IMG/VR virus record: IMGVR_UViG_3300043786_000977
Location: 1-64,000 of that record
Direction: 5' to 3' (one strand)
Length of the DNA stretch: 64,000 bases
The position numbers and the translations under genes were made by a program. Under the pieces are notes generated by a model, which saw only the letters and a list, made by a program, of their open reading frames with translations, was not told where the DNA came from and made no database searches. Shown in pieces: positions 47,889 through 62,895 of this stretch. Numbering within the stretch: position 1 is the stretch's first letter; each line of letters starts with the position of its first letter.

Positions 47889-48883
47889 GTGATAAGGTAG
47901 CCCAGGAAATTGAACAAAAAAGGAAGGCGCCACCACGCCATAAACCGCGGGATGTAGCCTATCCTGATTATAACAAGTCACTCGTCACTCAACGGCATCG
48001 ATCACCGTTACGCGCTGGTGGGGAGCGTGCTGCTCAGACCGGTTTAACAGGGGCGGTACTCGGTGCACTCATCGCTCGCATTATGAGCAACAAGCCTCAG
48101 AATGTGGTTGGCGGTGCATTGGCTGGTGGTGCGTTGGGTGCAGTCCCGGGATTCGTTTCAGGTGCACGGGAAGCGAACAGTGAGAACAGTCGACTCCTCT
48201 TCCTACGTCGGCGCATGGGGATCAACGAACCAGGTGAACTGGATGCCCTGTTACAACATCCCGAGCTCATGCCATCGTTGAGTCAGAAGAAGGCCGCTGC
48301 ACCCAGCGCTATTTTGCAGGCTTTACAGAAGTTGCATCCGGTCAATAAAGGGTTGTTAACAGCAGGTGCTGCTGGTTTAGGCTGGGTCGGCGGTACGGAG
48401 GGTACATCGCGACTGGTGGGTTATCACGATGACCCGAGTGCACGGCATGTAGGCGGTTATGTCAATGCCGCGCAGGCGGCAGGGATCGTCGCGGCTATCT
48501 TGAGTAAGAAACCGCAGGCCCTTCATTTTCTAAAGAAACCAGGAACCTTAGCAGGTATGGCAAGTATGGAAGTAATTCCTGCAGGACTACGTTCCATGAA
48601 CCGTATGTCAGATGCTTCAGCAGCACAAGCAACGGGTCAGGTTTCACCGTCGATCTCTCGTGTCTTGAATACGTCTACTGCCCGGGGCGCAGGAATCGGC
48701 GCCGGTGCTGCAGGGTTGGCTGCCATTGTCTCTGGACTCTCAAGGTCCAAGCGTGACAAAGAGATCCAAGAGGGCCACGGCCGCGCTGGAATGGTCACCA
48801 GTGACTTCCTTAAATACTTGTTGCCTGCCATGATCGGTGGCGGTGTCGTCGGTTCTTTAACTGGGAAAAAGCCTTCTGCATAA
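47885..48883 (+). CDS. Glycine-zipper membrane-type protein with K-x-A motifs
   Basis: MSDKVAQ start, internal QKKAAA, about six GxxxG hydrophobic segments. Confidence 0.65.
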   Translation: MSDKVAQEIEQKRKAPPRHKPRDVAYPDYNKSLVTQRHRSPLRAGGERAAQTGLTGAVLGALIARIMSNKPQNVVGGALAGGALGAVPGFVSGAREANSENSRLLFLRRRMGINEPGELDALLQHPELMPSLSQKKAAAPSAILQALQKLHPVNKGLLTAGAAGLGWVGGTEGTSRLVGYHDDPSARHVGGYVNAAQAAGIVAAILSKKPQALHFLKKPGTLAGMASMEVIPAGLRSMNRMSDASAAQATGQVSPSISRVLNTSTARGAGIGAGAAGLAAIVSGLSRSKRDKEIQEGHGRAGMVTSDFLKYLLPAMIGGGVVGSLTGKKPSA

Positions 48884-49419
48884 TGAAAGAACTCATCATA
48901 CCGCAGCCAGCAAACGGTCGTTTCGGGTTTCCTGAATGGGGTTCACACATCCCCGTTATCACGAAAGTCCTGGACCGTCTCCAACCCAAGACCATTCTGG
49001 AATTGGGTAGTGGTGATCATTCTACAATCGTGTTTCATAGTTACGTGACCGGTGTCCCCGGCCGTTCATTGGTGACTCTGGATAATGATCTGACGTGGAT
49101 TGAGGGATTAGCGTGGCAACGGAACGCACAGCATGAAATACGTTATGTACCTGACTGGGATCCAAAGCATCACGATGGTTACTATGATCTGATCTTCATT
49201 GACCAGGCCCCCGAAGAAACACGTTGGCAGATATCGTTAGAGTGGGCGGCAACGCACTGTACCGTGGCAATGGTACATGACGAAAACTACGTAGATCGTT
49301 ACGGTCACCTTTATCCACTTTTCGCTTCCCGTGTCAACTATGGTGCCTACAAGTTCCATACCGGTGTCTTTGGGCGCGAAATCGATGTGACCGAATGGTG
49401 GCCTGACGGGGGCATCTGA
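48883..49419 (+). CDS. Class I SAM-dependent methyltransferase-like protein
   Basis: ILELGSG motif I, YDLIFID and VHD motifs. Confidence 0.7.
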   Translation: MKELIIPQPANGRFGFPEWGSHIPVITKVLDRLQPKTILELGSGDHSTIVFHSYVTGVPGRSLVTLDNDLTWIEGLAWQRNAQHEIRYVPDWDPKHHDGYYDLIFIDQAPEETRWQISLEWAATHCTVAMVHDENYVDRYGHLYPLFASRVNYGAYKFHTGVFGREIDVTEWWPDGGI

Positions 49420-50522
49420 TGAATCCGACACCGGATTATCTTGTCGTCGGCGCCGGTCCCTCCGGTTGTGTTATTGCGGAACGGCTGGCCGGCCGCGGCT
49501 GTTCTGTATGTCTGGTTGATAAACGAGACCATATCGGGGGTAACTGTCACGATGCGTATGACGATGCAGGCATCTTGGTGCACAGGTACGGGCCACACTA
49601 CTTCCGTACAAACGATGATGCGTTGCTGCAGTACCTATCTCAATTCACCGGTTGGTTACCTGCACAGTATATCGTGCAGAGCAAAGTAGGTGAGATATAC
49701 TATCCGCTGCCGATCAACCTGACGACATTGGAGATGTTCTTCAACCGAACGTTTGACGAGACGTCTGCCCGTGAATTCATTAAGTCCCGTTGTGAACCCA
49801 TAGCACAACCGACGAATGCGGAAGAGTACGTGCTGGCCAACATGGGCCGGGAACTCTATGAGACATTCTACCGGCCGTACACATTGAAACAATGGGGTTG
49901 TTCACCGCGGGAAATTGATGTCGCCGTATGTGGGCGGGTACCTATACGGTTCAACCGTGATTGCCGTTACGTGACACACAGGCATCAGTGTATGCCGGCC
50001 GACGGATACACGGCTCTGTTTACCCGTATGGTGACAGCGCGTGGTATCGTGGTACATTTGAACACGGATTACACGGCCATCAAAGAGTACTGCAAACCGA
50101 AGATTGCAACCGTGTATACCGGGCCTGTAGACACATATTTCGGTCACTGTTACGGTGCGTTACCGTGGCGTTCATTACGTTTCGAACCGCGGTATTATGC
50201 CACGGTTTTTAAGCAACCCTGTGTCCAGGTCAACTATCCGGATGAACAACCCTTTACACGTTCCGTCGAGATCAAACATGTCACGGGACAGGTACATCCC
50301 GCGACGACTGTGATATACGAGTACCCGGTAGCGACGGGTGAGCCTTACTATCCGGTACCCTCACAGGCATCGCGTGAACAGTATGCCCGGTATCAGGAAC
50401 TAGCAGAGCGTGAGACTGCACTACACCGTGTTCATTTTATCGGTCGCCTGGCCCAGTATACCTATATTGACATGGACCAGGCGATACTGGCTGCACTTAA
50501 AGCAGCGGACACGCTCATTTAA
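49419..50522 (+). CDS. glf: UDP-galactopyranose mutase
   Basis: VVGAGPSG FAD motif, RDHIGGNCHD, HRYGPHYFRT, YTLKQWG, LPWRSLRF, EPYYPV and GRLAQYTYIDMDQ. Confidence 0.93.
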   Translation: MNPTPDYLVVGAGPSGCVIAERLAGRGCSVCLVDKRDHIGGNCHDAYDDAGILVHRYGPHYFRTNDDALLQYLSQFTGWLPAQYIVQSKVGEIYYPLPINLTTLEMFFNRTFDETSAREFIKSRCEPIAQPTNAEEYVLANMGRELYETFYRPYTLKQWGCSPREIDVAVCGRVPIRFNRDCRYVTHRHQCMPADGYTALFTRMVTARGIVVHLNTDYTAIKEYCKPKIATVYTGPVDTYFGHCYGALPWRSLRFEPRYYATVFKQPCVQVNYPDEQPFTRSVEIKHVTGQVHPATTVIYEYPVATGEPYYPVPSQASREQYARYQELAERETALHRVHFIGRLAQYTYIDMDQAILAALKAADTLI

Positions 50523-52029
50523 GCCAGCTGTTCGCCAGCGAGTTACCGAGGTCCAGTACCACTTTGCCTGTGGCCTGGGCCAGCCGCACAGCAAGGCCTT
50601 TACCTGGCGCCCCTCCACTGAGAAGCACAAGGCCCGCGTGGTGCTGCTCTACGACGTCTGTGATGCGCTTGTGATCACGCCAGCCAGTCATTACCACGCC
50701 TGTAATGTCAGGGTGCTTATAACGCTTTTGCAGACTCGTGGCTAACCGTTCAGCGTCACCGTGTAGAATGAGCACACCACCCTGGTTGAGCACAGGACCC
50801 ACACGTCCTGTCGCCTGCCACAGTTCAGGGTAAAACTGATCAATGAAACGATCACGTTCAGGGAAGTACGGGTGTACCAGGAAATCGGCCCAGAAGATAC
50901 CCGAGATTGTGCAGGCCAGGAAGTCCGCATGGTTGCCGGCCCAGAGCAGATCACTACCCAACGCCTTCAAATCACAATCAACCAATCCGATACGTTTCAA
51001 GTAGGCCGGGTCTTTAAGGAAATGCTTAGGTGCTTCCTCACCGCGACTGTAGGCAATAATCGCCCGTTCACCGTCCGACATACGTACCACCGATGTCGGT
51101 ACTTTGTGTTTAAGGCGGTGTACGATCATGGCGGCTAATGCGTCGGATGAAAGTATCTTGTTGCAGAAGGCTTCGGTTTCGGCTGACAAGACGATTTTAC
51201 TGAAGTCCGGTCCTTGAACCTGTGGTATTTGTGCCCGTGGTTTTTGTACCTGCTGCTTTATTACGGTTGCTTTTGCCACAACGGGTACTGCGGGTAGACT
51301 CGGGATCGTCCACTTAGGCCACGCCTTCAACTTCTTATCTGACTCTCTGATATAATTCGCACGTCGGTGTAACGGATCCTTTATCCATTCTTTGGGATTT
51401 GGCAGTATCCATTTGTTAGCGCCACGCAAACGGATTAACGGGGTATGTGTGCGTTGCGCCCATACCGCGATATCTTCGTCGTCGCCTGAATGGATTGGCC
51501 CAGTACAAACGTCACGGGTTAAACCGAGCGCCTGTGGGTACGAGGCCATTACACCCGCACCGAGAATGTGTACACCGATATCGCGACTGATAGCATGATC
51601 GTAACCGTACAGGACGCGATTATCTTTCGCCAAGTTACGTGCGGGCATCGGTGCACCATTGCGTATACGATAAACACCACCATGTAGACCTACGATCGCT
51701 TTACGCTGGTAACGGTCAACGGCCTCGACAAGGTATTTAGCGTAGTCTGGTGGGTAGAGTATATCATCATCAACGGATAGATAATAACCGGCTTCGGCGC
51801 CTAACCAATGGAACTTACCGTGACTACCGACATCGGGCGCCGTGCACTCGGGGCCGGCCAGGATCACATCAAGTTTGGCGTCGTTTGGTAGCTCAGGCGG
51901 TCGTTCCGAATACCCGTTCAGATATAAACGCAGTACGTCGCATTGGGGTAGTAGGTCAGCAACTGCACGCAACATACCTGCTTTACGAGGCGGAAACGAC
52001 GCCATGGCAACAATGATTGGATCACTCAT
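50515..52029 (-). CDS. Two-domain glycosyltransferase: GT-A (GT2-like) plus GT-D-fold-like domain
   Basis: ASFPPR...YLSVDDDILYPPDY (DxD) in the N-half; SVVRMSDGE and GKVVLDLG in the C-half. Confidence 0.75.
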   Translation of the reverse strand: MSDPIIVAMASFPPRKAGMLRAVADLLPQCDVLRLYLNGYSERPPELPNDAKLDVILAGPECTAPDVGSHGKFHWLGAEAGYYLSVDDDILYPPDYAKYLVEAVDRYQRKAIVGLHGGVYRIRNGAPMPARNLAKDNRVLYGYDHAISRDIGVHILGAGVMASYPQALGLTRDVCTGPIHSGDDEDIAVWAQRTHTPLIRLRGANKWILPNPKEWIKDPLHRRANYIRESDKKLKAWPKWTIPSLPAVPVVAKATVIKQQVQKPRAQIPQVQGPDFSKIVLSAETEAFCNKILSSDALAAMIVHRLKHKVPTSVVRMSDGERAIIAYSRGEEAPKHFLKDPAYLKRIGLVDCDLKALGSDLLWAGNHADFLACTISGIFWADFLVHPYFPERDRFIDQFYPELWQATGRVGPVLNQGGVLILHGDAERLATSLQKRYKHPDITGVVMTGWRDHKRITDVVEQHHAGLVLLSGGAPGKGLAVRLAQATGKVVLDLGNSLANSWLK

Positions 52030-52059: not shown

Positions 52060-54846
52060 CTACGCTATATTGCGTAACGGTATTATCCTGTCAGCTGCCA
52101 CAACCCGCGGAAGCCAGAGCAGTTTCCGTTCGATCTGTGTATTCCATGTTTCCTTACGGATGATCCAGCAACGGTTCTTATCGACTTCGAGTTCTTCAGG
52201 ACCGTCAACGAGCAAGTTACGCTCCTTCAGTTCCTGCGTCAAGCCTTTGACGTCAAATGATAACTGCGCCGTCAGTTCCTTGTTCATACGATTTACGACT
52301 GCATGACTGATGATGACGTAATCATCCAATACGAAGATGTGTTGGTTACGAGCCGTGAAGCTGGTGGCAGTCGGCATCGCATTGTAGACGGTACAGATGA
52401 TAGGTGACTTGAATGACGCAAAGATGATTCGGTGCAGACTATCGAAGAACGAGTTAACGCCTGCGCCCATGTTATAGTAACTGTGTTTCATGATCTGCTG
52501 CATCATAGGCTGTGTGTCTAGTCCGAGCATAGTACAGATTGCACTGTAGGTACTCCAGGCCGGGTGCTGGCCGGTAGCATATACGTCAGTCGTTTTTGCG
52601 TGCACGATATACTCAAGTACGAAGGACGCAAACGACTCACGCAACTCAGCCAACGCTGCGGGATCGATGACACTCGTGGGTTCTGGTTTATCCGACACTG
52701 GTAATATGTAGGTCGTCCTCAGATCGCCGCCGTACATACCCGCCGTACTGCCGTCGGTTAGGGCGACCAGACTTATGGGACTGTTGAGGATCACTTGTTG
52801 CATACGGTCGCCACGCAGCGGAGGCAGGCAACCAATGAGGGGTAACGTACCTAGTTGTTCGTAAGCCTCAAGACTCTTGATTGGATTGGCAGGATCGATA
52901 ACGGGGATGAAATCATTGTCCGAGAAGAAGGCGCTGAGTTGACGGAATAACGGTTGCCATATACCAGCTTCCGACTCTACATAGAAAAGGTGACGTGGGC
53001 GTTGGTTATGTCCATGCTTCGCGTGGTGTAGTTCCTGTGTCATTTGGTGTACGACGTGCAGCAAACCACTGGTGAATGCTGCCACGTACATATTGTCACA
53101 ACTCTGCAACAGGTAGCGGTAGGGCTCCACCGCGCTTATTACGCTTTGCCCGGGGATTCCAGAGTATACTTGTGTTGCTGCAGCCGGCAACGTATGGATC
53201 TGTTTTTGTGGTGCAATGACAAGTTGATCCGTTCTGATGACAAAATTCGGTAAGTGTAGATCGTGGGCCTGGTCACAGCCCAGTCGTTGAACCTCACGAT
53301 GGAGTTCGCACTTTTCACCCAATTTACATAGGATGTCACGCCAGTCGTAACCCGGGTGCTCGTAGAACGCAATATACGGGGCTTGATTGCGTTCGCCGAA
53401 TGCACGGATGACGTGACGTTGTAATTCCTTTGCCTTGCCCCATATCGGTTCTGGTATACGTACGACTAACGGTAATGTGGCAGTATCTGTAGGTGTCACC
53501 GTGACGATGAGTTCTTCCTCACCTGTGTATGTACGGATTTTATGGTTAACAGTGATGCCGACGTTGCACAAGACTGATTCGTTACCTCGACGATCGAGTG
53601 CTTTGAGTGCCGTAGTCGTGCGATAGAGTCCGCATCCGTTTCCGAGGATCAGGCGATTTGTGGATTCGGCAACAGCTGTTTGTAGAATCTCTAGCCCTTC
53701 TTTCGAGATCTTCAGACGTTGTGCTGCGCTTATTAGTTCTAGACGTACATTGTCAGGTAACGTAACGGAGTAGAATGCCTTGTATACCTCTTCGGTACCG
53801 TTATGACTTAAAAGGCGATCCATTGTTCGGAGTGTCCACGTGTCTAATGCGAGTGTGCCATCCGCACTACTCAGACGATGCCTAAGCTGTTCCGCTGTAA
53901 TCTGTGTAGCGTCGTGGGCCTCCCACACCTTGATCCGTGGTTGTAGGGCGGCGCCACTTACGTAATGCTGGACGGCTAGTGTTTGCAGTGCGTTGAACAG
54001 CGTGAGAGGCTGTGCCTGCGTAGCTAGTAGAAAAAGAATGTCCAATGAGGCGAAACGTTCAGGCAGCGGGAACCCGGCTAGCGCGATGATGGGTGGTCGC
54101 TTACTGGATTCGGCCGTGTAGGTCCCATATAGTAAACTGGCTGCATGTGGATCGAATGTCGCGATCACGGAACGTGGCATATCATCGAACCGCTCCATGT
54201 AGACACCGATATCGTCCCGCGTAATCGTTATCGTTGTAGTCGTCAGTGGTGATGCTGCATCTTCCACGCGAATATGGGTGACCTCGCCGTTGTACGTGAA
54301 TGGGTAGATGATATGATTCGTGCGTTGGTACTTGGTCTTGTTAAATTCCTGGAACGGTCGTGGAATCTCGTCACCCCGAACGAGCAAGCCGATCTCGGGC
54401 GGTAGGACTCGTAGGTTATTCTGCGACAGGCCGGCACGCAGTTGTAACTTATTGGGTGTTTGGCGACAGGCTTGTTGGCATTGGCTTACGTACGCCTGGA
54501 TACGACTTTGTGTGGTGCGCCCTTCCGTATAGGCGGCAGCCTCGCTATCCAATAAGGGTTCTGTCAACAGGTGAGCGTAGGTGCCGCCTGGACGGAATTG
54601 GGCTACGGCTTCTGTAATCGTGAGGCGTTTTACCGCACTGAGTAGACTGACTGCGTCACCATAGAAGCGACAGGCAGGGTCCGCACACTCGAAGAACGTA
54701 TTACCCGTATACGGATTGGCATGAACACGCAAGGTGTCGGCCGCACTAGCGTGCAGGGGACAGCTATACTTGGCGTTGACATTATCCCCCGGATGGGGTA
54801 ATGTACATCCTAAAGCAGATAAGAAGTTGTGGTTATGCAGTTGCAT
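52060..54846 (-). CDS. Primase-like protein with N-terminal CHC2-type zinc finger, apparently degenerate
   Basis: CPLH...FECADPACRFYGDAVSLL...LTITEAV zinc-binding domain; no clear TOPRIM acidic motifs or Walker A. Confidence 0.5.
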   Translation of the reverse strand: MQLHNHNFLSALGCTLPHPGDNVNAKYSCPLHASAADTLRVHANPYTGNTFFECADPACRFYGDAVSLLSAVKRLTITEAVAQFRPGGTYAHLLTEPLLDSEAAAYTEGRTTQSRIQAYVSQCQQACRQTPNKLQLRAGLSQNNLRVLPPEIGLLVRGDEIPRPFQEFNKTKYQRTNHIIYPFTYNGEVTHIRVEDAASPLTTTTITITRDDIGVYMERFDDMPRSVIATFDPHAASLLYGTYTAESSKRPPIIALAGFPLPERFASLDILFLLATQAQPLTLFNALQTLAVQHYVSGAALQPRIKVWEAHDATQITAEQLRHRLSSADGTLALDTWTLRTMDRLLSHNGTEEVYKAFYSVTLPDNVRLELISAAQRLKISKEGLEILQTAVAESTNRLILGNGCGLYRTTTALKALDRRGNESVLCNVGITVNHKIRTYTGEEELIVTVTPTDTATLPLVVRIPEPIWGKAKELQRHVIRAFGERNQAPYIAFYEHPGYDWRDILCKLGEKCELHREVQRLGCDQAHDLHLPNFVIRTDQLVIAPQKQIHTLPAAATQVYSGIPGQSVISAVEPYRYLLQSCDNMYVAAFTSGLLHVVHQMTQELHHAKHGHNQRPRHLFYVESEAGIWQPLFRQLSAFFSDNDFIPVIDPANPIKSLEAYEQLGTLPLIGCLPPLRGDRMQQVILNSPISLVALTDGSTAGMYGGDLRTTYILPVSDKPEPTSVIDPAALAELRESFASFVLEYIVHAKTTDVYATGQHPAWSTYSAICTMLGLDTQPMMQQIMKHSYYNMGAGVNSFFDSLHRIIFASFKSPIICTVYNAMPTATSFTARNQHIFVLDDYVIISHAVVNRMNKELTAQLSFDVKGLTQELKERNLLVDGPEELEVDKNRCWIIRKETWNTQIERKLLWLPRVVAADRIIPLRNIA

Positions 54847-54904: not shown

Positions 54905-55957
54905 ATGGATATAATTCATGACCTTAGTCACCGCACCTGGTACCACATCGGCACGCAGCACGCGGCGTTGATTCCGTCCTATGTCTTGGATGCCACACTG
55001 CCTGAGAAAACGGCGGCAGACGCGCTTCCAGACCGAGCGTACGCTGACGATGTCAGACGCTTGTTCCCGATCGTAACACCGGTTGATACTTGGTTGTCTG
55101 CAGCTTATTTTGCTAAACATGCTGAAGAAGTATACACATCTGCGCTGCGAAGTCACGTAGAATCGCGTATCAAGGAAGCTGCGGCTGTTTTCGGTATTGC
55201 TGATGATGTGGCAACAATCATGACCGCTATACGGCAAGTACCCGAGGTGAAACAGGCTTCGGATAGTGGCTACGGTTGGGTGAATGGTACAGAGCGTAAG
55301 TACCCCATGTTCGACGCCAAGGGGGTCCATAAGGCTGCTGAGTACTTCATGGAGAATCGGTATCAATACCCGCCGGCGATGCGTAAGACAATTGCAGCAG
55401 CCATCATGCGTAAGGCCGGTGAATACAAGGTCGATGTACCCACGTCTATTCGTAAGGAAGCAGGACACGGGATGCCGCGGCGTGACACGTTGATGGCGGA
55501 ACTGCTGGCTCGTGCCCAGATGACTAAGGACGCCGAGATCAGCGCGGCCATTGCCAATCTCAATGAAATAATCCCCAACGTGGACATGGCTGAATTGGGT
55601 GGGGTGCTGGATAAGTTCGCGGAAATCGTCGATGCTTTAGATAACGCAGAGAACCTGCGTTGCGGTTACGGTAAACGACTCCTGGCACCGGCCGAATTCA
55701 TTTATGACCTAGATCCCAAGGAGGCTCAAGCCCTAGCTGAAGATTCTGTGGAATTGAATCATTGGGTCTTTAGCATCACCAAGCTTGCAGCACTATCCCC
55801 GGACATATACAGTGGTGTACTCGGGGACGATTTTGCAATACGGATTAAAGCCGCGGACGGCAAGATCGATAAGACAAAACTGGCCGACGAGCTATTTTCT
55901 CTGCCGCGTCCGGATCGTGCAGCGTTGGAATCGCATTTAAAAACCGTGTTTTCGTGA
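54905..55957 (+). CDS. K-x-A-rich helical protein, putative head core protein
   Basis: ATG 54905 after AAGGAG; 12 of 21 lysines are in K-x-A. Confidence 0.7.
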   Translation: MDIIHDLSHRTWYHIGTQHAALIPSYVLDATLPEKTAADALPDRAYADDVRRLFPIVTPVDTWLSAAYFAKHAEEVYTSALRSHVESRIKEAAAVFGIADDVATIMTAIRQVPEVKQASDSGYGWVNGTERKYPMFDAKGVHKAAEYFMENRYQYPPAMRKTIAAAIMRKAGEYKVDVPTSIRKEAGHGMPRRDTLMAELLARAQMTKDAEISAAIANLNEIIPNVDMAELGGVLDKFAEIVDALDNAENLRCGYGKRLLAPAEFIYDLDPKEAQALAEDSVELNHWVFSITKLAALSPDIYSGVLGDDFAIRIKAADGKIDKTKLADELFSLPRPDRAALESHLKTVFS

Positions 55958-56013: not shown

Positions 56014-56670
56014 GTGGTGAATCTAAGTTATCCCCGCCAACAAGCACTACAGTCCCCTGAGACACTAGCCACAGTCATTCACACGATCTTGCGTGAACAG
56101 TACGGTGAAGAGGTGTATGACTGGGACCCGGTAACAGTCTACCTGGAGACACAGGCAGATTTCCGTGCAGATATGTGTTCGGAGGCGATCGATCGCTGGT
56201 GTGCCATTCAGGTGGTTATGACCAGCGACGCGTTCTTCAAGCGTTTAGATGCCTTCCTGGGTATCTGTAACACAATAGCGGATGGTCAGCCCTTCTTCGG
56301 TACATTCGACCCTGTAACAGTGGAGGAGGCTGCCTGGACGATCGCAGAGGTCGCGTTCAATCGGGAACTGCTCCCATTCTCATATGCTATCAAGCAGTAT
56401 CTGCGGACGATACTGAAACAAGAGGGTTACACAGAATCGACATACCCTGCAATCTTTGCAGAGGTCTTTGATAAACAACCTGACGGCGACACCGTGCGCG
56501 CCGGTCTGGCTGCTGTAAACAATAATACAAACCTCGATACGTACCTGGACGACCAGATAGCCGACATGGTCTCCCAGTTCAACCGTATACCCGATTTGAA
56601 GGGTATGGATGACATCATCCTTCGACGGGGCTTAGAAGAAGCACTACAGTCGGCAGGAGAGAAGAAATGA
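56014..56670 (+). CDS. Hypothetical acidic protein
   Basis: GGGAGG RBS, GTG start (56014 or 56017). Confidence 0.7.
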   Translation: MVNLSYPRQQALQSPETLATVIHTILREQYGEEVYDWDPVTVYLETQADFRADMCSEAIDRWCAIQVVMTSDAFFKRLDAFLGICNTIADGQPFFGTFDPVTVEEAAWTIAEVAFNRELLPFSYAIKQYLRTILKQEGYTESTYPAIFAEVFDKQPDGDTVRAGLAAVNNNTNLDTYLDDQIADMVSQFNRIPDLKGMDDIILRRGLEEALQSAGEKK

Positions 56671-56972
56671 GATCAGCATTACTAACAGTGGAGTTCTGGG
56701 TGACGATGGTAACGAACGTCGTCGGTTTAGTTGTCCTGTTCGGTGGACTATCCGCGGATAAAGCAGATTCGCTGAAGTCGACCCTGACAGTGATCATAGG
56801 TGCCGTACTACCGCTGGTCGCGTCGACAGTATACGCCAAGTCGCGTAGTGATCTGAAACGCACAATTGCAGATGCAACACTTTATCGTCTAACGCCTACG
56901 GATGCAGACGGTAAGGTACGCACTGCTTCAGTGGACGACGCGACAGCTGTTTTAAAACGTCTGGGCATCTAA
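56667..56972 (+). CDS. Holin-like small membrane protein
   Basis: 101 aa, two hydrophobic helices, TVEFW N-terminal motif, charged C-terminal tail. Confidence 0.45.
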   Translation: MRSALLTVEFWVTMVTNVVGLVVLFGGLSADKADSLKSTLTVIIGAVLPLVASTVYAKSRSDLKRTIADATLYRLTPTDADGKVRTASVDDATAVLKRLGI

Positions 56973-58708
56973 TGACCAACGTACGTCCAGAAAAACCGAC
57001 AGGCCCCGGTAATCGGGGTCTGTCGACTACCGTTACCCGTGAGCTCGGAACCAAGACCGGTGCTTATGCAGGGCTTGTCAAGATCGCACAAGGAGTGTTA
57101 GGCGCTGTCCGAAGCGGGGTGCTTTCGCCTTTGTCTAAAGCCAGAAGTATTACGAGTGTAGGTAACGCGGTCACCCAAGGTCTGCCCAGTTCTACTTCAA
57201 ATAGTCTGCCAGGACGCGCCATCGAGACTGCGGATACGGTACTAGGCACTACTGCAAGTGGTGTCGGTTTGACCGGTTACGGTGCTGAGTTGACGGGTGC
57301 TGCACTTCGGGGAATACCTCTTGCCGCTAACACGGTGGCGACTACAAAAGGCATAGCGGGAGCCGCGGGTCGTGTTGCCGTACCCTTGGCGCTCGCAGGG
57401 CATGCGATTGATACAGCCCGCTTAATTAACGATCCACGGGGAGTGACTGATGCGGCTGCCGCCAATATTCAGGATTACGGTGACAGCTTCGGCAGTGCGA
57501 TGAAAGCAGTTGGGCATAATACGCTGCAAGCAGTAGGCTCATCTATTCCAACAATCGCAGCTACAGTTCGTGGTGTAGGCGAATTAGGTTCACAACTCGT
57601 GGAAAACAGACGCCTCGCTGCTCGAGATCGACAGCTTGCACCGCGGTATCGTATACTTCAATTACAACAACAGCAACGGCAACGGTTAAAACAACTGCAG
57701 CCACCACAACAGGCCGGGACGTTCGTACAGAAGACTAGTATGTTCTCAGGCCTCGTCAAGATCGCCCAGCAGAACTTTGCTCCAGGTATCGTCGACAAGG
57801 CAGTCTACGGCGATGTGTTGGGTACCCTGAAACCCGGCGACATCACTGACTTCGTATTGCAACACCACAGTACAGTACGTAACCCCAAGTATCCACATTA
57901 CGACATGCGTCTAGGTACCAAGGATACGAATCTTTTCAGTTGGGCCATACCCAAGGCAGAATTGCCGCGTCCAGGCACATCCAAGATGCCGATCCCGCAG
58001 ACTCAATTGCATACGTACCAGTACGGTAGCTTCGAAGGTAAGATCCCACACGGATATGGCGCCGGCGTAGTAAGAATGGCCGACAAGGGTAAGGCAGTCA
58101 TCACCCGTGTCACGCCAAACACGCTCCATTTTACCCTGGGGCATACCAAGGTACCTACACGTTACGTGCTTGTCCATATCGGTGGACGGGACGGTAAGAT
58201 GTGGCAGTTAATCGCGAAACCCGAACCAGGTAAGGTACCGGGCGCGGACGAGGAACCCATCTACGCACGGATAAACGCCGTCGACCAGGACGATGCGATC
58301 CAACAGGCAACCCAGGTCCAGGCGAAAATTGACAAGGCTGCGTCGCTTATTCCGTTGCGCTTCATCAACAAGAAGGGCGGGGTGAAAGCATCAGCGGCTG
58401 TTGAGATTGCAGATACCGCTGAACTGCGTCGCATTGGTTTATCCAAACGTGCATCGCTACCTGCCAATCACGGTATGTTCTTCGATAAGGTCGGTGCCTT
58501 CTGGATGAAGGATGTTCACTTTCCTTTAGACTTGGTATTTGTCGATCGACATGGTACGGTACTCGAGAAGCACGCGATGCCAGTAGACAAGGGCGGACGT
58601 AAGTTATATAGACCATCTAGCGCTGACGTTGCGCATGCGATTGAACTCCCGCACGGTTGGTGTGACCGTTATGGGATAACGACGGGTGACATTGTAAAGG
58701 CGGGTTAA
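56972..58708 (+). CDS. Multidomain protein: Gly/Ala hydrophobic domain, LigD-type DNA 3'-phosphoesterase domain and DUF192 domain
   Basis: FVLQHH..HYDMRL..LFSWAIPK..H...Y..FEG.IP.GYGAGVV...DKG (LigD PE); VEIADT...GL..R..LP...GMFF...FWMKDVHFPLDLVF...IELP.G (DUF192). Confidence 0.85.
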   Translation: MTNVRPEKPTGPGNRGLSTTVTRELGTKTGAYAGLVKIAQGVLGAVRSGVLSPLSKARSITSVGNAVTQGLPSSTSNSLPGRAIETADTVLGTTASGVGLTGYGAELTGAALRGIPLAANTVATTKGIAGAAGRVAVPLALAGHAIDTARLINDPRGVTDAAAANIQDYGDSFGSAMKAVGHNTLQAVGSSIPTIAATVRGVGELGSQLVENRRLAARDRQLAPRYRILQLQQQQRQRLKQLQPPQQAGTFVQKTSMFSGLVKIAQQNFAPGIVDKAVYGDVLGTLKPGDITDFVLQHHSTVRNPKYPHYDMRLGTKDTNLFSWAIPKAELPRPGTSKMPIPQTQLHTYQYGSFEGKIPHGYGAGVVRMADKGKAVITRVTPNTLHFTLGHTKVPTRYVLVHIGGRDGKMWQLIAKPEPGKVPGADEEPIYARINAVDQDDAIQQATQVQAKIDKAASLIPLRFINKKGGVKASAAVEIADTAELRRIGLSKRASLPANHGMFFDKVGAFWMKDVHFPLDLVFVDRHGTVLEKHAMPVDKGGRKLYRPSSADVAHAIELPHGWCDRYGITTGDIVKAG

Positions 58709-58773
58709 TAACGTTGCTATTAACGTTATAACTGATTGTGTATACACACCGCCATTTTAAGGTGGAGGATACG

Positions 58774-61700
58774 ATGCGATTTTTAGGTATAGTACTTGTA
58801 GCATTACTTGGTTTGATCCCGGTATCTCACGGGCAGAACGCTACGCTTGCTCAACTCGGTGCCCGTGGTGTAACCGAGGTTGGCGGGTCCAGCATATACG
58901 CCCATTATATGCTACGTCTCGGACCTGACGGGCGTATCACAATGGCCGTGTTACCTGCTGGTCTCGGCGTACCTGTTCCTGGGTCACAGATCGCTTATCT
59001 CGATCCTGTCACCGGTGTCGATGATCCGTTGCGTGTAGGCGGACCGACAACGCCTTACAAGACGTTAAATTACGCTACGACCACGTACCCGAGTAACGCC
59101 GTGTCCGGAGTCATTTACGTTTTGGCACCAGGTACATATGCATCTACCCTGATTGATACGACAACTACTACGGGTAGACGCACGCTTACGTTGTTAGGTT
59201 ATGAGACCCGACGTACGTATATACCAGAGGTGAAGTACTACGGAAGCAGCGGCGGTGACGTGACCGTCACGTTACACGGTGTGCATGTTGGTAAACTCTG
59301 GCAAGCCAACAACAAAGCGATGACGGTATACCTGACCGGGAATGCCCGGATTGATTCGTTGGAAATGAACGGTGCCAAGCCCTGTACTGTGTATCGTGAA
59401 TCCGGGACTGTCATTGGATCATTCACAGGGTCATTGATGTACACGAACCAATGGCTCGACACAGCGACGCAGATGGGGTATACGCCGACCAATACGGCGC
59501 ACTGGTATGGTAGTGAGCCTCTGACGATTGCAGACGCGTTACACGCGCTGGCCGGCCGGTGCCCTGTTCCGTACGGGACGGTACCTGGCGATATGTTGAC
59601 CTGGGATGGATCCAACTGGGTACGTGTTGCGAACGGTACTACAAACGATTTCCTCATCGGAGGCACCATGCCGTCATTCCAACCGCGTTATATCTGGCCT
59701 GGCACTTCGGCTGGCGCTGTACCTTATTGGGATATCGGGACAACCAACTGGTTATCAGTCACGGGTACCACGAATAGCCAACATGTCCTGTTCGGTGGTG
59801 TGACACCGGCTTTCGGTAGGTTACAGGCGACACATATGGATTACATCAACGGTACGACAACCACGGTACATGCTGTACTTGGTGATTATGCAGTACGCCT
59901 TAATAACCTGGAACTTGTCAGTAACCTGGTCGTATGGGCCGCGAACAGCTGGAGCAATAGTGCTGCCCGCGGCATTACAAATAATCAGGTTGCATTATGG
60001 GATTGGGCCGCGAACAGCTGGAGCAATAGTCCCGCATTCGGAATCACGAGCAACAACATCACGTTATGGACAACCGCGGCAACAAATTGGGTCGGTAGTG
60101 CTGCTTTTGGTATCACGTTAGAGGATACGGGTCGCTGGAACACGTACATGACCAACAGTATACCGATACGTTACTTACGCCGTGAGGGCGCTCTGTTAGG
60201 TCAAACCATAGTCTTCGACGGTACCAACTGGGTTTCTGCCGTCGCGGATTGGTGGATCACGAACGGTCCGGAACGTATGGTAACAGTCGAGGGGTATACC
60301 AACACAGTTGACAAAGCCTTCTTGACTGATGGAACACGACCGATGACAGCTCGAATTCCAATCTTCGTGGATGATGGCGTTGCTGCCATCTCAATCGGGG
60401 CGTGGCAAGGTACAAGTTACGTTTACAACGTATTCGGTGAACTCTATTTGCGAGATAACACAAGGCCCGGTTATAGAATTACCACAGCTAAAGAGTTGGA
60501 CGATTATGCGCGAACCAATTACGTGACAGACATCGTGGTCGCTTCCACCAACCCAATCCCTAACTGGATTATATCTTCCACCAACCCAATCCCTAACTGG
60601 ATTATATCTTCCACCAACCCAATCCCTAGCTGGATCATGTCCGCTACCAACCCCATCCCCTCGTGGATAGCCTCTGCGACCAGCCCCATTCCTAGTTGGA
60701 TCACAGCCTCCACCTCAGGTCTCGTGAGAGCGACCATTACAAATGGTCTTGCTTCCACCAATTACGTGATTGCGTCAACTAACCCTATTCCCTTATGGAT
60801 AACTTCTGCTACAAACCCGATCCCTAGCTGGATAACTTCTGCAACAAACCCCATTCCTAGCTGGATCATATCCGCCACAAACCCTATCCCTAGCTGGATA
60901 ACTGCTTCGACATCAGGTCTTGTTAGAGCAACAATCACGAACGGGCTGGCTTCAACCAATTACGTGATTGCTGCAACCAACCCTATCCCTGGCTGGATAA
61001 CTTCTGCAACCAACCCTATCCCTGGCTGGATAACTTCTGCGACCAACCCTATCCCTAGCTGGATAACCTCTGCAACTTCGGGTCTCGTAAGAGCAACAAT
61101 CACGAACGGGCTGGCTTCCACCAATTACGTGATCGCTGCAACCAATGGACTTGTAACGAAGACTATTACTAACGGCCTTGCTTCGATCTCGTATGTGAAC
61201 GGTGTTACAAGTGGCATACCTGCAATGATAACTGCTGCTACTAACAGTCTTGTAACAAAGGCTATCACGAATGGTTTGGCCTCTATCGACTACGTGACTG
61301 GAGCAATCTCCGGTATCCCTATTTATGCAACAGGGAACAATATCTATGTGGACAATCAGAGAACAGATCCATTCACACCAGACGGCACAATCATGCGTCC
61401 GTATGCAACAGTGTCCGCAGCTATGGCCGTAATCGGCAGTTCACAACCGGCAGACTGGGAGAATGTCACGCTCCGTTTCTACGCCGTGAAGGTGATGCCT
61501 GGAACATACGTCGAAGATGTGACGGTCCCGTGGAAGCCTTTCGTTTCAATAGACCTGTCATCTGCGGTCATTGTGGGTAACATTACTCGTTCAATTCCCG
61601 ACGGCGACTTTTCTACCAGGGTCTCGACTCTGGTTATCAAGGGTGATTCGTTACGTCCCGCATATCTGGACGGACAGCATACGGTGATTGGTATTGCTGG

Positions 61701-62895
61701 TAAGGTCATATTTGAAGCGGCTTCGTCGAGTCTTGGAATGTCTCCTTTCCACGAACTACATGTAATTGATGCCGGTATATCGGGAGGAGTTGAGTACAAG
61801 GGAACCAGCAATACAAACTCTGGTCAATCTGGACACATCTTCTTGCGTGATTCACAAGTGGGTACGATCCAATCCATAGAAGGTTGGGCTGGCGTTACTC
61901 TGTTCTCATACGGCTGGGGTGGTGGTCATACAGGCGGTGGATACGCAGGTAGTGGCATAGGTTCACTGATCGGTAGCGTTCTGCCTTATAATCTTCAATC
62001 GACGATGATCAGCGGCGGCATGAACCTCACAGACGCTTATCCCGGAACCAGTCCAGAGATGTTGTGGCACAACGTCAGATTTGAAACTAATTTCATATAT
62101 GTCGTTACCAATGTTACTTATGGAGTTAAACTCGATACAGCCTCTTACAATTCTTGGCTAGAAGCATCGTTGCCGTCTGAGCGTGGAGTTTGGACCACCG
62201 ACGGTAAGATGGTGCTGACTGATTACGGTTCAGGGTCGTTTGGTAATGCCACGAATATGTTCCGTGGTGTCGGCACAACGGGAGCAGTGACCAGCGTATC
62301 TGCGGACACCAACAAGTACCTGAGGGGTGATGGTAACTGGATAGCAGTTCCGATGGGTCCTGCTGGAACTAACGGAGTTAATGGAACTAACGGCTCTAAC
62401 GGTGTGGCCTTCGTGACTATTTCCAATGTGGTAACACTCGCCTCCGGCTCTTCTGCTTATGTGAGCAACGTGGTGGTCGGAACCACGAACCGCCTGACGT
62501 TCGGCATCCCTGCCGGTAGGGATGGTGTAATTACTAACAGCGGGTACATGGCCATCACCAACTGGCCGACCGCTGCTGGCATCACCAACATCATCACCTT
62601 GGTTCCCGGGTACACCATCTATAACTTAACCGTTACAAATCAACCAACGGTGATTAATTTTGCTTTTTCTAATTCACCAATAGCGAGTCAGGCAGTCAAC
62701 TTCGAGTTGGTCTTGAAGCAGACAACCACCAACACGTATATCTATTTACCAGGAACGAATCGGGTGTATTACTTCTCGACCCCCACCACCAACGCAACGG
62801 TAGCAAACCAAAGGCATTACTCAAGCTGGCGTGTGTGGATGGAAGGCTCAACCACAAATATCTTCTGCAACCAATGGCTGACGAGGAACCCATGA
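58774..62895 (+). CDS. Large T-N-rich fibre/adhesin-like protein with Sec-type signal peptide
   Basis: ATG 58774 after GGAGG; MRFLGIVLVALLGLIPVSHG|Q; GDMLTWDGSNW and KYLRGDGNW fibre motifs; two GxxxxPYxT beta-helix-entry motifs; short collagen-like GxN run. Confidence 0.75.
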   Translation: MRFLGIVLVALLGLIPVSHGQNATLAQLGARGVTEVGGSSIYAHYMLRLGPDGRITMAVLPAGLGVPVPGSQIAYLDPVTGVDDPLRVGGPTTPYKTLNYATTTYPSNAVSGVIYVLAPGTYASTLIDTTTTTGRRTLTLLGYETRRTYIPEVKYYGSSGGDVTVTLHGVHVGKLWQANNKAMTVYLTGNARIDSLEMNGAKPCTVYRESGTVIGSFTGSLMYTNQWLDTATQMGYTPTNTAHWYGSEPLTIADALHALAGRCPVPYGTVPGDMLTWDGSNWVRVANGTTNDFLIGGTMPSFQPRYIWPGTSAGAVPYWDIGTTNWLSVTGTTNSQHVLFGGVTPAFGRLQATHMDYINGTTTTVHAVLGDYAVRLNNLELVSNLVVWAANSWSNSAARGITNNQVALWDWAANSWSNSPAFGITSNNITLWTTAATNWVGSAAFGITLEDTGRWNTYMTNSIPIRYLRREGALLGQTIVFDGTNWVSAVADWWITNGPERMVTVEGYTNTVDKAFLTDGTRPMTARIPIFVDDGVAAISIGAWQGTSYVYNVFGELYLRDNTRPGYRITTAKELDDYARTNYVTDIVVASTNPIPNWIISSTNPIPNWIISSTNPIPSWIMSATNPIPSWIASATSPIPSWITASTSGLVRATITNGLASTNYVIASTNPIPLWITSATNPIPSWITSATNPIPSWIISATNPIPSWITASTSGLVRATITNGLASTNYVIAATNPIPGWITSATNPIPGWITSATNPIPSWITSATSGLVRATITNGLASTNYVIAATNGLVTKTITNGLASISYVNGVTSGIPAMITAATNSLVTKAITNGLASIDYVTGAISGIPIYATGNNIYVDNQRTDPFTPDGTIMRPYATVSAAMAVIGSSQPADWENVTLRFYAVKVMPGTYVEDVTVPWKPFVSIDLSSAVIVGNITRSIPDGDFSTRVSTLVIKGDSLRPAYLDGQHTVIGIAGKVIFEAASSSLGMSPFHELHVIDAGISGGVEYKGTSNTNSGQSGHIFLRDSQVGTIQSIEGWAGVTLFSYGWGGGHTGGGYAGSGIGSLIGSVLPYNLQSTMISGGMNLTDAYPGTSPEMLWHNVRFETNFIYVVTNVTYGVKLDTASYNSWLEASLPSERGVWTTDGKMVLTDYGSGSFGNATNMFRGVGTTGAVTSVSADTNKYLRGDGNWIAVPMGPAGTNGVNGTNGSNGVAFVTISNVVTLASGSSAYVSNVVVGTTNRLTFGIPAGRDGVITNSGYMAITNWPTAAGITNIITLVPGYTIYNLTVTNQPTVINFAFSNSPIASQAVNFELVLKQTTTNTYIYLPGTNRVYYFSTPTTNATVANQRHYSSWRVWMEGSTTNIFCNQWLTRNP
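60541..61143 (+). repeat. 33-bp coding repeats (S/A-TNPIPSWITS) punctuated by three GLVRATITNGLASTNYV units
   Basis: About 12 copies of the 11-aa unit in three blocks. Confidence 0.9.

What the first reader, a model, noticed from the sequence alone, without database searches (positions are those of the whole stretch)
56972..58708. Polyprotein of unrelated domains joined at K-x-A sites, including a LigD 3'-phosphoesterase
Seen: GLVKIAQ occurs twice with near-identical DNA (about 57071 and 57749), once before a Gly/Ala hydrophobic domain and once before the LigD PE domain (about 57848-58220). IDKAAS precedes the DUF192 domain (about 58400-58708). PE catalytic residues look intact (QHH, HYDMR, H-x3-Y). 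Known: LigD PE heals 3'-phosphate DNA ends in bacterial NHEJ. Inference: a head-packaged polyprotein cut into separate enzymes and injected with the genome to repair ends or counter host nucleases, so new cargo could be added by fusing it behind a K-x-A tag.
Basis: partly seen in the sequence, partly recalled or inferred. Interest (0 to 1): 0.8.

Follow-up and report, generated by a model that had tools for sequence, protein, structure and literature searches.

The report
Phage cargo polyprotein, K-x-A cut sites
A giant lake-water phage encodes a modular protein (a DNA-end 3'-phosphatase plus a domain of unknown function, with its ligase deleted) whose modules are separated by a K-x-A motif that is also heavily over-represented in the phage's own head-maturation protease, which suggests a cut-and-load code for packing enzymes into the capsid.

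Summary
ORF 56972..58708 (578 aa) contains GLVKIAQ twice, an intact LigD-type 3'-phosphoesterase (PE) and a DUF192 domain, joined by low-confidence linkers.

Three findings change the picture.
1. The "IDKAAS junction" is largely a deletion scar. Relatives carry PE, then ATP-DNA-ligase, then DUF192. The window protein has lost about 265 aa of ligase and keeps only the K-I-D of motif I. Independent assemblies confirm this.
2. The protein belongs to a large, phage-borne, shuffled family (626 representatives at E<=1e-10, up to 2,587 aa). Its members also carry SNF2, InPase, 2H, GNAT and HD domains, which are hallmarks of "polyvalent" proteins.
3. K-x-[AS] precedes the PE module in 68% of internal boundaries (background 4%). 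It also precedes DUF192 and sits in N-terminal leaders.

K-x-A is also the top spaced-pair outlier (z=8.4) in four window proteins. One of them (5828..7249) I identify as the prohead protease-scaffold fusion; another lies in the PE operon.

Best reading (about 0.55): a head-loaded precursor cut after K-x-A by the prohead protease, analogous to T4 L-x-E and SPN3US A-x-E. Cleavage, packaging and enzyme activity are all untested.

Verdict: a new variant of a known kind, and interesting.

The parts
56972..58708 (+). 578-aa modular precursor gene. Its start overlaps the stop of the upstream gene (TAATG).
   Evidence: The N-terminal aa 17-39 are conserved with P0002, which supports the ATG start over the database's GTG at aa 50.
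56972..57088 (+). N-terminal leader, aa 1-39, ending in L-V-K-I-A (candidate site 1; GLVKIAQ copy 1 at 57071-57091).
   Evidence: The same leader motif sits 4-17 aa from the start in P0002, P0004, P0009, P0010, P0018, P0019 and P0020.
57089..57766 (+). Gly/Ala/Thr-rich helical module plus Gln-rich spacer, aa 40-265. It is either cargo or a long propeptide. It ends in GLVKIAQ copy 2 (57749-57769; candidate site 2).
   Evidence: Low-confidence helices. aa 103-225 are 35% identical to P0005 79-199. Absent from P0002, where the leader abuts PE.
57767..58231 (+). LigD-type 3'-phosphoesterase module, aa 266-420. It includes the N-terminal arm NFAPGIVD and the catalytic residues H299, H309, D311, R313, H347 and Y351.
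58286..58333 (+). Remnant of the deleted ATP-dependent ligase: the first helix plus K452-I-D454 of motif I. The deletion junction lies between nt 58333 and 58334.
   Evidence: BLASTP vs P0002. Q450, K452 and D454 are invariant. Independent contigs span the junction with 0 differences.
58334..58342 (+). K455-A-A457, the native pre-DUF192 junction (candidate site 3), in a linker with pLDDT below 50.
58343..58705 (+). DUF192 (UPF0127/COG1430) module, aa 458-578.
56667..56972 (+). 101-aa two-TM protein (weak holin-family hit). Its adjacency to the PE gene is conserved in related phages.
54905..55957 (+). 350-aa protein, first gene of the same rightward gene block, with 12 K-x-A sites (4.2 expected). 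A candidate protease substrate.
   Evidence: In 8 of 12 sites K and A are invariant in orthologues while x varies.
5828..7249 (+). Prohead protease (aa ~1-208) fused to a helical scaffold-like tail (aa ~240-473). It has 13-15 K-x-A/S sites, two of them in the inter-domain linker.
3344..4825 (+). 493-aa K-x-A-rich protein in the presumptive head module (11-12 sites vs 3.7-5.0 expected). Identity unknown.
   Evidence: The Atlas search was uninformative.
7267..8502 (+). 411-aa Ala/Lys/Pro-rich protein directly after the protease gene, moderately K-x-A-enriched.

Best explanation
The gene encodes a modular precursor of the 'polyvalent' or internal-head-protein type, in an uncultivated contractile-tailed jumbo phage (208.9-kb contig) from lakes.

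Shown:
- The layout is a 39-aa leader, a Gly/Ala-rich helical module, an intact LigD-type 3'-phosphoesterase, a stub of a deleted ATP-dependent DNA ligase, and DUF192.
- The three boundaries lie in flexible linkers and each carries K-x-A preceded by a hydrophobic residue (LVKIA, LVKIA, IDKAA).
- The same motif marks module boundaries and N-terminal leaders across a large shuffled family.
- The motif is about 3-4-fold over-represented in the phage's prohead protease-scaffold fusion and three other proteins. One of these is encoded in the same gene block as the PE gene.

Inferred:
- The prohead protease cuts after the Ala of K-x-A (P3-P2-P1), by analogy with T4 gp21 (L/I-x-E) and SPN3US gp245 (A-x-E).
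- The leader or the Gly/Ala region targets the precursor to the prohead core.
- Cleavage releases PE (starting QQNFAPGI...) and DUF192 (starting SLIPLRF...) as separate proteins that leave the capsid with the DNA.
- PE then removes 3'-phosphates or 3'-ribonucleotides from broken nucleic-acid ends early in infection.

In full-length relatives the fused ligase would seal the healed ends. This phage has lost that step and must rely on another ligase.
For: Domains and catalytic residues.
Linkers with pLDDT below 50 at aa 245-267, 421-433 and 453-457.
Ligase deletion: confirmed in independent metagenome assemblies.
Family size and shuffling. SNF2, InPase, 2H, GNAT, HD and kinase domains co-occur, and these are hallmark polyvalent-protein domains in PMC5512222.
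Boundary motif statistics: 52/77 vs 4.1% (p 3e-53, not phylogeny-corrected); DUF192 23/49 vs 12.3%; leaders 28/63 vs 16%. 47 representatives start right at the PE arm (MP|EYAPGI), which is the predicted mature N-terminus.
K-x-A enrichment: z=8.4, the top of 1,600 spaced pairs; 46 of 101 Lys in four proteins vs 14 of 156 in tail and baseplate proteins. It is conserved in orthologues.
Protease identity of 5828..7249: T4 gp21 is the top PDB hit (prob 1.0, E 4e-3; the next hit is E 0.68); dozens of prohead proteases in BFVD; Atlas leads to S78/S77.
Structural context: sheath and Baseplate_J in the window, and conserved synteny.
Generality: K-x-A-rich ORFs lie near the PE gene in 10 of 46 other viral loci.
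Precedent: a tripeptide-motif protease with auto-cleavage and 20-254-aa propeptides holding several motif copies (PMC10052503).
Against: - There is no direct evidence of cleavage, packaging or ejection.
- The strict GLVKIA motif occurs in no other protein of the 64-kb window.
- The PE protein itself is not K-x-A-enriched.
- The domain-avoidance test was mixed. The PE core is depleted (z -6.8), but DUF192 is enriched through intrinsic motifs, and the rest is neutral.
- Some relatives (P0014, P0007, P0011, P0012) have no leader.
- The gene sits about 12 kb beyond the tail-fibre region, after a minus-strand block of glycosyltransferase and primase-like genes. It follows a holin-like gene rather than lying among head genes.
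- The major capsid protein and portal were not identified, so classical substrates could not be checked.
- The boundary statistics are not corrected for shared ancestry.
- The Lys upstream of PE might partly reflect the 'KRDF' N-terminal arm of bacterial LigD PE (recalled from memory, untested).
- An S8 subtilase in the same region is an alternative protease.
Confidence: 0.55

Rival explanations
1. The protein is an uncleaved, non-virion, multidomain end-healing enzyme made in the infected cell. On this reading K-x-A at the boundaries is a linker or N-terminal-arm feature, and the K-x-A richness of the head proteins is an unrelated structural or DNA-binding property.
For: No cleavage data exist. 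The PE protein is not K-x-A-enriched. DUF192 carries intrinsic K-x-A motifs. Leaderless relatives exist. The gene lies away from the head module. Bacterial LigD works as one fused polypeptide (established knowledge).
Against: The motif also precedes non-PE modules (2H, unknown modules, the Gly/Ala module) and occurs in N-terminal leaders. 47 proteins start exactly after the motif position. The spacing- and direction-specific K-x-A enrichment (gap 1 only, z 8.4) sits in the protease-scaffold protein and in an operon partner, with K and A conserved and x free. Simple helix composition does not predict that.
Confidence: 0.25
2. The precursor is processed at K-x-A, but by a protease other than the prohead protease, either the conserved S8 subtilase (45626..46618) or a host enzyme. 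The products then act in the cytoplasm or envelope rather than being capsid cargo.
For: The S8 peptidase is syntenic in related phages. Its own N-terminus reads PPTRVKIA|VSIL. A C39-like peptidase follows the PE gene in L001, and a C39 domain is embedded in one family member. A holin-like two-TM gene is directly upstream.
Against: The strongest K-x-A enrichment is in the prohead protease-scaffold fusion itself, including its inter-domain linker. That matches the known auto-cleavage of gp21 and gp245 (PMC10052503). The S8 protein is only weakly enriched (z 2.1).
Confidence: 0.12
3. Whatever its route, the cassette repairs RNA (for example tRNA cut by host anticodon nucleases) rather than phage DNA. 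PE would act as a 2',3'-cyclic or 3'-phosphate healing enzyme alongside 2H and HD phosphoesterases and the ligase.
For: Relatives fuse 2H/LigT, 2H-SAK, HD, P-loop kinase and in one case an RNA_ligase-type hit to PE-ligase. Phage RNA-repair systems combine end-healing and sealing (PMC7824862).
Against: The ligase module matches ATP-dependent DNA ligase families and OB_2. PE is characterised in DNA end repair (established knowledge). SNF2, UDG and InPase partners point to DNA.
Confidence: 0.2

Closest known systems
Internal head / ejection proteins matured by a tripeptide-specific prohead protease (T4 gp21 with L/I-x-E and capsid-targeting leaders; phiKZ and SPN3US gp245 with A-x-E)
   Same: The protease has the gp21/HK97-type fold. 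A three-residue motif with a free middle position is present. Substrates and the protease itself hold many copies. N-terminal leaders or propeptides of about 10-260 aa are present. The phage is a jumbo phage (PMC10052503).
   Different: The motif would be K-x-A (basic P3, Ala P1), whereas the sites read or recalled here all end in Glu. Several cargo modules are strung on one polypeptide with a site at each junction. Cleavage is not shown here.
Polyvalent proteins of phages and conjugative elements (Iyer et al. 2017, PMC5512222)
   Same: The proteins are large and shuffled. They combine SNF2, InPase, 2H, GNAT, peptidase and other conflict domains, lie near virion genes, and are proposed to travel with the DNA.
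   Different: That catalogue does not mention LigD-PE, DUF192 or DNA ligase; its only ligase mentions concern RNA ligases. It invokes embedded peptidase domains (MPTase) for processing, not a prohead-protease junction code. The window protein has only two recognisable enzymatic or globular modules.
Bacterial LigD (NHEJ ligase with PE, ligase and polymerase domains)
   Same: It has the PE fold and all catalytic residues. In relatives, PE is fused to an ATP-dependent ligase with an OB domain.
   Different: There is no polymerase/primase domain and no Ku was seen. PE comes first and DUF192 last. The protein is phage-borne. In the window protein the ligase is deleted. The equivalent of the Glu two residues before the H-x3-Y histidine is Gln (QTQLH).
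Phage P1 Dar antirestriction system (DarA, DarB, DdrB head proteins)
   Same: These are head-packaged, proteolytically processed proteins that protect incoming DNA (as summarised in PMC5512222).
   Different: The domains differ, there is no sequence relationship, and the processing logic is unknown or different.

Membership tests
LigD 3'-phosphoesterase (PF13298, LigD_N) | Sequence match above the curated threshold | tested here: met
   54.9 bits vs cutoff 31.1, aa 303-401. PDB sequence hits 3p4h, 3p43 and 3n9b.
LigD 3'-phosphoesterase (PF13298, LigD_N) | PE beta-barrel fold | tested here: met
   AF2 pLDDT about 90 for aa 280-420. Foldseek TM 0.83-0.87 to 3p43 and 3p4h and 0.70 to 3n9b.
LigD 3'-phosphoesterase (PF13298, LigD_N) | Metal-binding and catalytic His, His, Asp, Arg, His, Tyr | tested here: met
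   H299, H309, D311, R313, H347 and Y351 are invariant in 16 and 12 sequences. The mapping to P. aeruginosa residue numbers is from memory.
LigD 3'-phosphoesterase (PF13298, LigD_N) | Mn-dependent 3'-phosphatase / 3'-ribonucleotide resection activity | not testable with these tools
   Needs an enzyme assay.
DUF192 / UPF0127 (PF02643) | Sequence match above threshold, and fold | tested here: met
   75.4 bits vs cutoff 27. TM 0.79 to 3pjy. The papers found assign no function.
ATP-dependent DNA ligase (PF01068 + OB) | Nucleotidyltransferase and OB domains with motif I KxDG | tested here: not met
   The window protein keeps only Q450-x-K452-I-D454, with Lys in place of the motif's Gly. About 265 aa present in P0002 are missing. 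Relatives do meet the criterion.
Polyvalent proteins (Iyer et al. 2017) | Multiple conflict-related domains in one polypeptide, with shuffled architectures among homologues | tested here: met
   The window protein itself is a small member (PE + DUF192 + Gly/Ala module).
Polyvalent proteins (Iyer et al. 2017) | Encoded by a phage or conjugative element, next to virion or transfer genes | tested here: inconclusive
   Phage origin is clear (IMG/VR contig; sheath, baseplate and prohead protease). The immediate neighbours are unannotated, a holin-like gene lies upstream, and the head module is about 50 kb away.
Polyvalent proteins (Iyer et al. 2017) | Delivered into the host with the DNA | not testable with these tools
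   Needs virion proteomics or ejection assays.
Prohead-protease-processed head cargo (T4 IP / SPN3US E-protein type) | N-terminal leader or propeptide ending in the protease's motif | tested here: met
   Leader aa 1-39 ends in LVKIA. The same leader occurs in 7 close relatives. Leaders are enriched 28/63 vs 16%.
Prohead-protease-processed head cargo (T4 IP / SPN3US E-protein type) | The same motif is shared with the protease's other substrates, including the protease itself | tested here: met
   K-x-A z=8.4 in four proteins including the protease-scaffold fusion. All 40 homologues have 11-20 sites vs 3.6 expected. The capsid protein and portal were not identified.
Prohead-protease-processed head cargo (T4 IP / SPN3US E-protein type) | Actual cleavage and presence in the capsid | not testable with these tools
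   No proteomic data were available.
Prohead serine protease (S78/S77, gp21-like), for gene 5828..7249 | Assemblin/gp21-like fold and family resemblance | tested here: met
   5jbl is the top hit (prob 1.0, TM 0.55 on the target). BFVD lists prohead proteases. Atlas gives S78/S77 leads. There is no Pfam or PHROG sequence hit.
Prohead serine protease (S78/S77, gp21-like), for gene 5828..7249 | Catalytic Ser/His identified | tested here: inconclusive
   Invariant H57, H85, H98, S149 and D157 exist but were not mapped onto the gp21 active site.

The most novel reading that the evidence does not exclude
K-x-A is the recognition code of a clade of gp21/HK97-type prohead proteases in freshwater jumbo phages. 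It doubles as a portable junction tag: any enzyme module placed behind a leader or K-x-A linker is loaded into the prohead, cut free and delivered with the genome. This would be a natural plug-in system for capsid cargo. The PE, ligase and DUF192 end-repair cassette is its commonest payload, and payloads are gained (the Gly/Ala module here) and lost (the ligase here) in the wild.
Probability: 0.4. Interest if true: 0.8.

Novelty: new variant of a known kind. Interest (0 to 1): 0.68.

Why it matters
If the reading is right, three things follow.
1. Head-maturation proteases would have a new specificity (Lys at P3, Ala at P1).
2. A widespread, previously uncatalogued end-repair cargo (LigD-type phosphoesterase, DNA ligase and DUF192) would join the set of proteins that phages bring into the cell. 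This points to host defences that leave 3'-phosphate ends. It also gives DUF192 its first functional context.
3. The modular 'tag plus cut site' logic makes testable predictions about which proteins of uncultivated jumbo phages are capsid cargo, from sequence alone. It could also be borrowed to load chosen proteins into phage heads.

Even if cleavage is disproved, two results stand: the ligase-deleted allele persisting in lakes across runs dated 2016-2024, and the directional K-x-A bias in a prohead protease family. The second would then need another explanation.

Tried and rejected
- PHROGs on the protein gave no hit.
- Megablast and tblastn against 50,697 phage records found no close relative, only one weak DUF192 match.
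- A word-indexed search restricted to the N-terminal 262 aa found only the protein itself.
- The strict GLVKIA-type motif scanned over the window and loci occurs only in this gene family. I therefore could not show it in other substrates and moved to the shorter K-x-A core.
- Generic K-x-A counts within the protein are not enriched.
- The depletion-in-domains test gave opposite results for PE and DUF192, so it is not used as support.
- The genome-contig scan found only two short MAG contigs, so there is no host assignment.
- Atlas searches of the 350-aa and 493-aa K-x-A-rich proteins were uninformative.
- A PDB profile search with the protease alignment gave no sequence-level hit.
- Pfam and PHROGs on about 30 other window proteins gave almost nothing beyond sheath, Baseplate_J, S8, GLF and GT-D. 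The capsid protein and portal remain unidentified.
- The 2016 paper that coined the 'Swiss Army Knife' RNA-repair proteins is not held, so I could not check whether it lists PE-ligase fusions.
- A lysis-cassette reading (holin-like neighbour, periplasmic-type DUF192) was considered. I set it aside because PE and ligase have no plausible envelope role and the holin hit is weak (E 6e-5).
- Assembly artefact as the cause of the ligase loss is rejected by independent contigs.
Full report
WHAT IS THERE. The window is the first 64 kb of IMG/VR contig IMGVR_UViG_3300043786_000977 (208,908 bp). It carries a tail sheath gene (12910..16059, PHROG 279) and a Baseplate_J gene (28615..30222). Almost all its proteins lack Pfam or PHROG matches, and no cultured phage is close. 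So this is a very divergent contractile-tailed jumbo phage. Near-identical sequence occurs in lake and freshwater metagenome runs dated 2016, 2020 and 2024.

The ORF 56972..58708 exists as described (578 aa). GLVKIAQ occurs at aa 34-40 and aa 260-266. The two DNA copies share 17 of 21 bases, and all four differences are synonymous. That argues for selection on the peptide rather than a recent duplication.

Pfam finds LigD_N (aa 303-401, E 1e-14) and DUF192 (aa 476-576, E 4e-21). PDB sequence and fold searches confirm both. An AlphaFold model built on 16 sequences gives confident PE and DUF192 domains and a low-confidence helical N-terminal 267 residues. It gives pLDDT below 50 at exactly the three proposed junctions (aa 245-267, 421-433, 453-457). 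The PE metal and catalytic residues are invariant.

THE 'IDKAAS JUNCTION' IS A DELETION SCAR. The closest relative, P0002 (841 aa), aligns with window aa 233-457 at its own residues 227-449 (77% identity). It then aligns with window aa 450-578 at residues 714-841 (88%). The skipped ~265 residues are an ATP-dependent DNA ligase: nucleotidyltransferase plus OB domain. P0002 reads QVQEKIDGAHG...AKYKAASLIPLRF where the window reads QVQAKIDKAASLIPLRF. The window protein therefore keeps the first ligase helix and the Lys and Asp of motif I (Q450, K452 and D454 are invariant columns) and nothing else of the enzyme.

The deletion is not an assembly error. Contigs from independent runs span it with no differences (X2: 57535-58845; X4: 58273-58746). 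P0009 shows an independent partial ligase loss. P0036, P0054 and P0055 are PE-DUF192 fusions without any ligase remnant.

Window aa 17-39 match the segment that directly precedes PE in P0002. Relative to that architecture, the Gly/Ala-rich module (aa 40-265, related to the N-terminus of P0005) is an insertion bracketed by the duplicated motif.

THE FAMILY. The close clade has this layout: a variable N-terminus, then PE, then ligase, then a variable middle, then DUF192. In P0014 InPase replaces DUF192, which there moves to a neighbouring gene. An exhaustive search finds 10,954 representatives at E<=1e-3, 626 at E<=1e-10 and 60 at E<=1e-30. The PE module sits at the start, middle or end of proteins of up to 2,587 aa.

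Among 37 large representatives the co-occurring families are DUF192 (15), SNF2 plus Helicase_C (10), DNA ligase (9), InPase (8), 2H phosphoesterases including '2H-SAK' and Acb1, GNAT, HD, P-loop kinases, UDG, C39 peptidase, LysM and inteins. SNF2, InPase, 2H and GNAT are hallmark domains of the 'polyvalent proteins' of phages and conjugative elements. Those proteins are proposed to travel with the DNA (PMC5512222). That paper does not mention LigD-PE, DUF192 or DNA ligase.

The module is found in 47 IMG/VR contigs, many of 100-440 kb. Synteny around the gene is conserved in related phages: a ~350-aa protein, a ~215-aa protein, a 76-101-aa two-TM protein, the PE gene, then a giant repeat protein.

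THE JUNCTION MOTIF IS REAL. K-x-A as a bare tripeptide is not enriched in the protein (5 vs 3.9 expected). Its positions are what matter.
- I anchored 124 representatives on the conserved start of the PE arm ([DE][FY]APGIPD). Of 77 internal boundaries, 52 have K-x-[AS] within the last 7 residues, against 4.1% of background windows (p 3e-53, not corrected for shared ancestry). A further 47 proteins start exactly there (MP|EYAPGI, MA|EFAPGI).
- DUF192 is preceded by K-x-[AGS] about 8-11 residues before its first strand (23/49 vs 12.3%).
- Where the first module is not PE, the first 25 residues contain the motif in 28 of 63 proteins, against 16% background.
- In the close clade the leader is the longer [FY]-x-G-L-[LV]-K-[IV]-A. 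It sits 4-17 residues from the start whatever module follows (2H, unknown, PE, or Gly/Ala).

AN INDEPENDENT LINK TO THE HEAD PROTEASE. I scanned all 43 larger window proteins. K-x-A is strongly over-represented in three of them and moderately in a fourth.
- 5828..7249: 15 K-x-[AS] sites vs 5.0 expected.
- 54905..55957: 12 vs 4.2.
- 3344..4825: 12 vs 5.0.
- 7267..8502: moderate enrichment.

Pooled over these four, K-x-A is the top outlier among all 1,600 residue pairs at spacings 0-3 (z 8.4; next best 4.7). In them 46 of 101 lysines lie in K-x-A, against 14 of 156 in five tail and baseplate proteins. The site context is roughly [F/L]-x-K-x-A-[A/E/D/S]-D. All three candidate sites of the PE protein fit it.

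In orthologues of the 350-aa protein, 8 of 12 sites keep K and A invariant while the middle residue varies. The 473-aa protein has more than 469 homologues of constant length. All 40 that I examined have 11-20 sites, against 3.6 expected.

Its N-terminal ~208 residues are highly conserved. The model (pLDDT 79) matches the T4 capsid assembly protease gp21 as the top two PDB hits (probability 1.0, E 4e-3; the next hit is E 0.68). It also matches dozens of annotated prohead proteases among viral models, in line with language-model leads to Peptidase_S78 and S77. The C-terminal half is helical and more variable, like a scaffold. The low-confidence linker between the halves holds two conserved K-x-A sites.

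So the phage's own head-maturation protease is its most K-x-A-rich protein, and a second K-x-A-rich protein heads the gene block that contains the PE gene. K-x-A-rich ORFs also lie within 10 kb of the PE gene in 10 of 46 other viral loci.

HOW IT MOST LIKELY WORKS. The precedent is direct. In SPN3US the prohead protease gp245 cuts after the tripeptide A-X-E and cleaves itself. It removes N-terminal propeptides of 20-254 residues from capsid, portal and ejection proteins, and those propeptides contain several motif copies. In T4, propeptides target proteins into the prohead core (PMC10052503).

By analogy I propose that the protease encoded at 5828..7249 cuts after the Ala of K-x-A. The 578-aa precursor would enter the prohead through its leader or its Gly/Ala region. 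It would be cut after A39, A265 and A457. PE (with a 35-aa ligase stub) and DUF192 would then be released as separate capsid cargo and leave with the DNA. PE would heal 3'-phosphate or 3'-ribonucleotide ends. In full-length relatives the fused DNA-type ligase would seal them.

Every step after the sequence statistics is inference. I put the whole chain at about 0.55. The domain architecture, the ligase deletion and family membership are above 0.9.

WHAT SPEAKS AGAINST IT.
- There are no proteomic data.
- The strict GLVKIA motif is unique to this gene in the window.
- The capsid protein and portal were not identified.
- Some relatives lack any leader.
- The gene lies far from the head module, behind a minus-strand block (glycosyltransferase and a 928-aa protein with a CHC2-like zinc finger), and directly after a weakly holin-like two-TM gene.
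- The test for motif avoidance inside folded cargo was mixed: PE is depleted, DUF192 is enriched through intrinsic motifs, and the rest is neutral.
- A conserved S8 subtilase whose own N-terminus reads RVKIA is an alternative protease.
- The boundary statistics are inflated by relatedness.

The rivals are listed with the results that would separate them: an uncleaved cytoplasmic enzyme, processing by another protease, and RNA rather than DNA as substrate.

COMPARISON AND NOVELTY. It works like a T4 or SPN3US internal-head or ejection protein, and like a polyvalent protein. It contains a true member of the LigD-PE family (sequence, fold and catalytic residues all met) and of DUF192. It is not a DNA ligase, because that defining domain was tested and is absent. 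Membership among capsid cargo cannot be tested here.

Three things are new relative to what I could read:
1. the PE, ligase and DUF192 cassette as a widespread phage module;
2. a junction and leader motif shared with a prohead protease, with a proposed specificity (Lys P3, Ala P1) unlike the Glu-ending sites read or recalled here;
3. natural gain and loss of modules at those junctions.

I rate it a new variant of a known kind, with interest 0.68.

Noticed in passing
window 58774..62895: This 1,373-aa protein follows a strong Shine-Dalgarno (AAGGTGGAGGA). It has a Sec-signal-like N-terminus (MRFLGIVLVALLGLIPVSHG|Q), many tandem ATNPIPSWI and GLVRATITNGLASTNYV repeats, and no K-x-[AS] site at all. 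It has no Pfam or PHROG hit. A signal peptide is unusual for a phage fibre.
   Followed up: partly
window 52060..54846 (-): This 928-aa protein is divergently transcribed from the PE gene block. Its N-terminus resembles a CHC2 primase zinc finger (CPLH...C..C). It has no family hit, and it is conserved in synteny (874-946 aa in L001-L005).
   Followed up: no
window 45626..46618: An S8 subtilase (Pfam E 1e-42; phrog_3677 'protease') lies in the structural region and is syntenic in L001. Its N-terminus, PPTRVKIA|VSIL, resembles the PE leader motif. It could be a substrate, an alternative processing enzyme, or cargo.
   Followed up: partly
window 47885..48883: A glycine-zipper protein (weak Gly-zipper/Rick_17kDa hits) starts MSDKVA|QEIE. 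A homologue lies at the edge of L002. It may be related in kind to the Gly/Ala module of the PE protein and to the C-termini of P0011 and P0012.
   Followed up: no
window 49419..52029: A UDP-galactopyranose mutase (+) and a GT-D-like glycosyltransferase (-) are embedded between structural genes. L001 and L002 carry different glycosyltransferases at the same place, which suggests a variable glycan-modification cassette.
   Followed up: no
window 56667..56972: A 101-aa two-TM protein (weak holin phrog_526, E 6e-5) has a stop codon that overlaps the PE start (TAATG). The adjacency is conserved in all five related loci. Its role is unexplained (holin, membrane tether or assembly factor).
   Followed up: partly
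L001 12607..14736: In a related phage the PE-ligase-InPase gene is followed by a C39-like peptidase gene (172 aa) and a separate 523-aa DUF192 protein. So DUF192 stays linked to the cassette even when it is not fused.
   Followed up: no
window 58709..58730: A perfect 8-bp hairpin (ATAACGTT-GCTATT-AACGTTAT) lies right after the PE stop codon. It has no T-run, so it is a weak terminator at best.
   Followed up: no
representatives P0018-P0156: Some giant PE-containing proteins carry inteins and LAGLIDADG endonucleases, plus SET, UDG, LysM and GerD domains. P0143 (2,457 aa) matches the Gly/Ala region in 20 repeated stretches.
   Followed up: no
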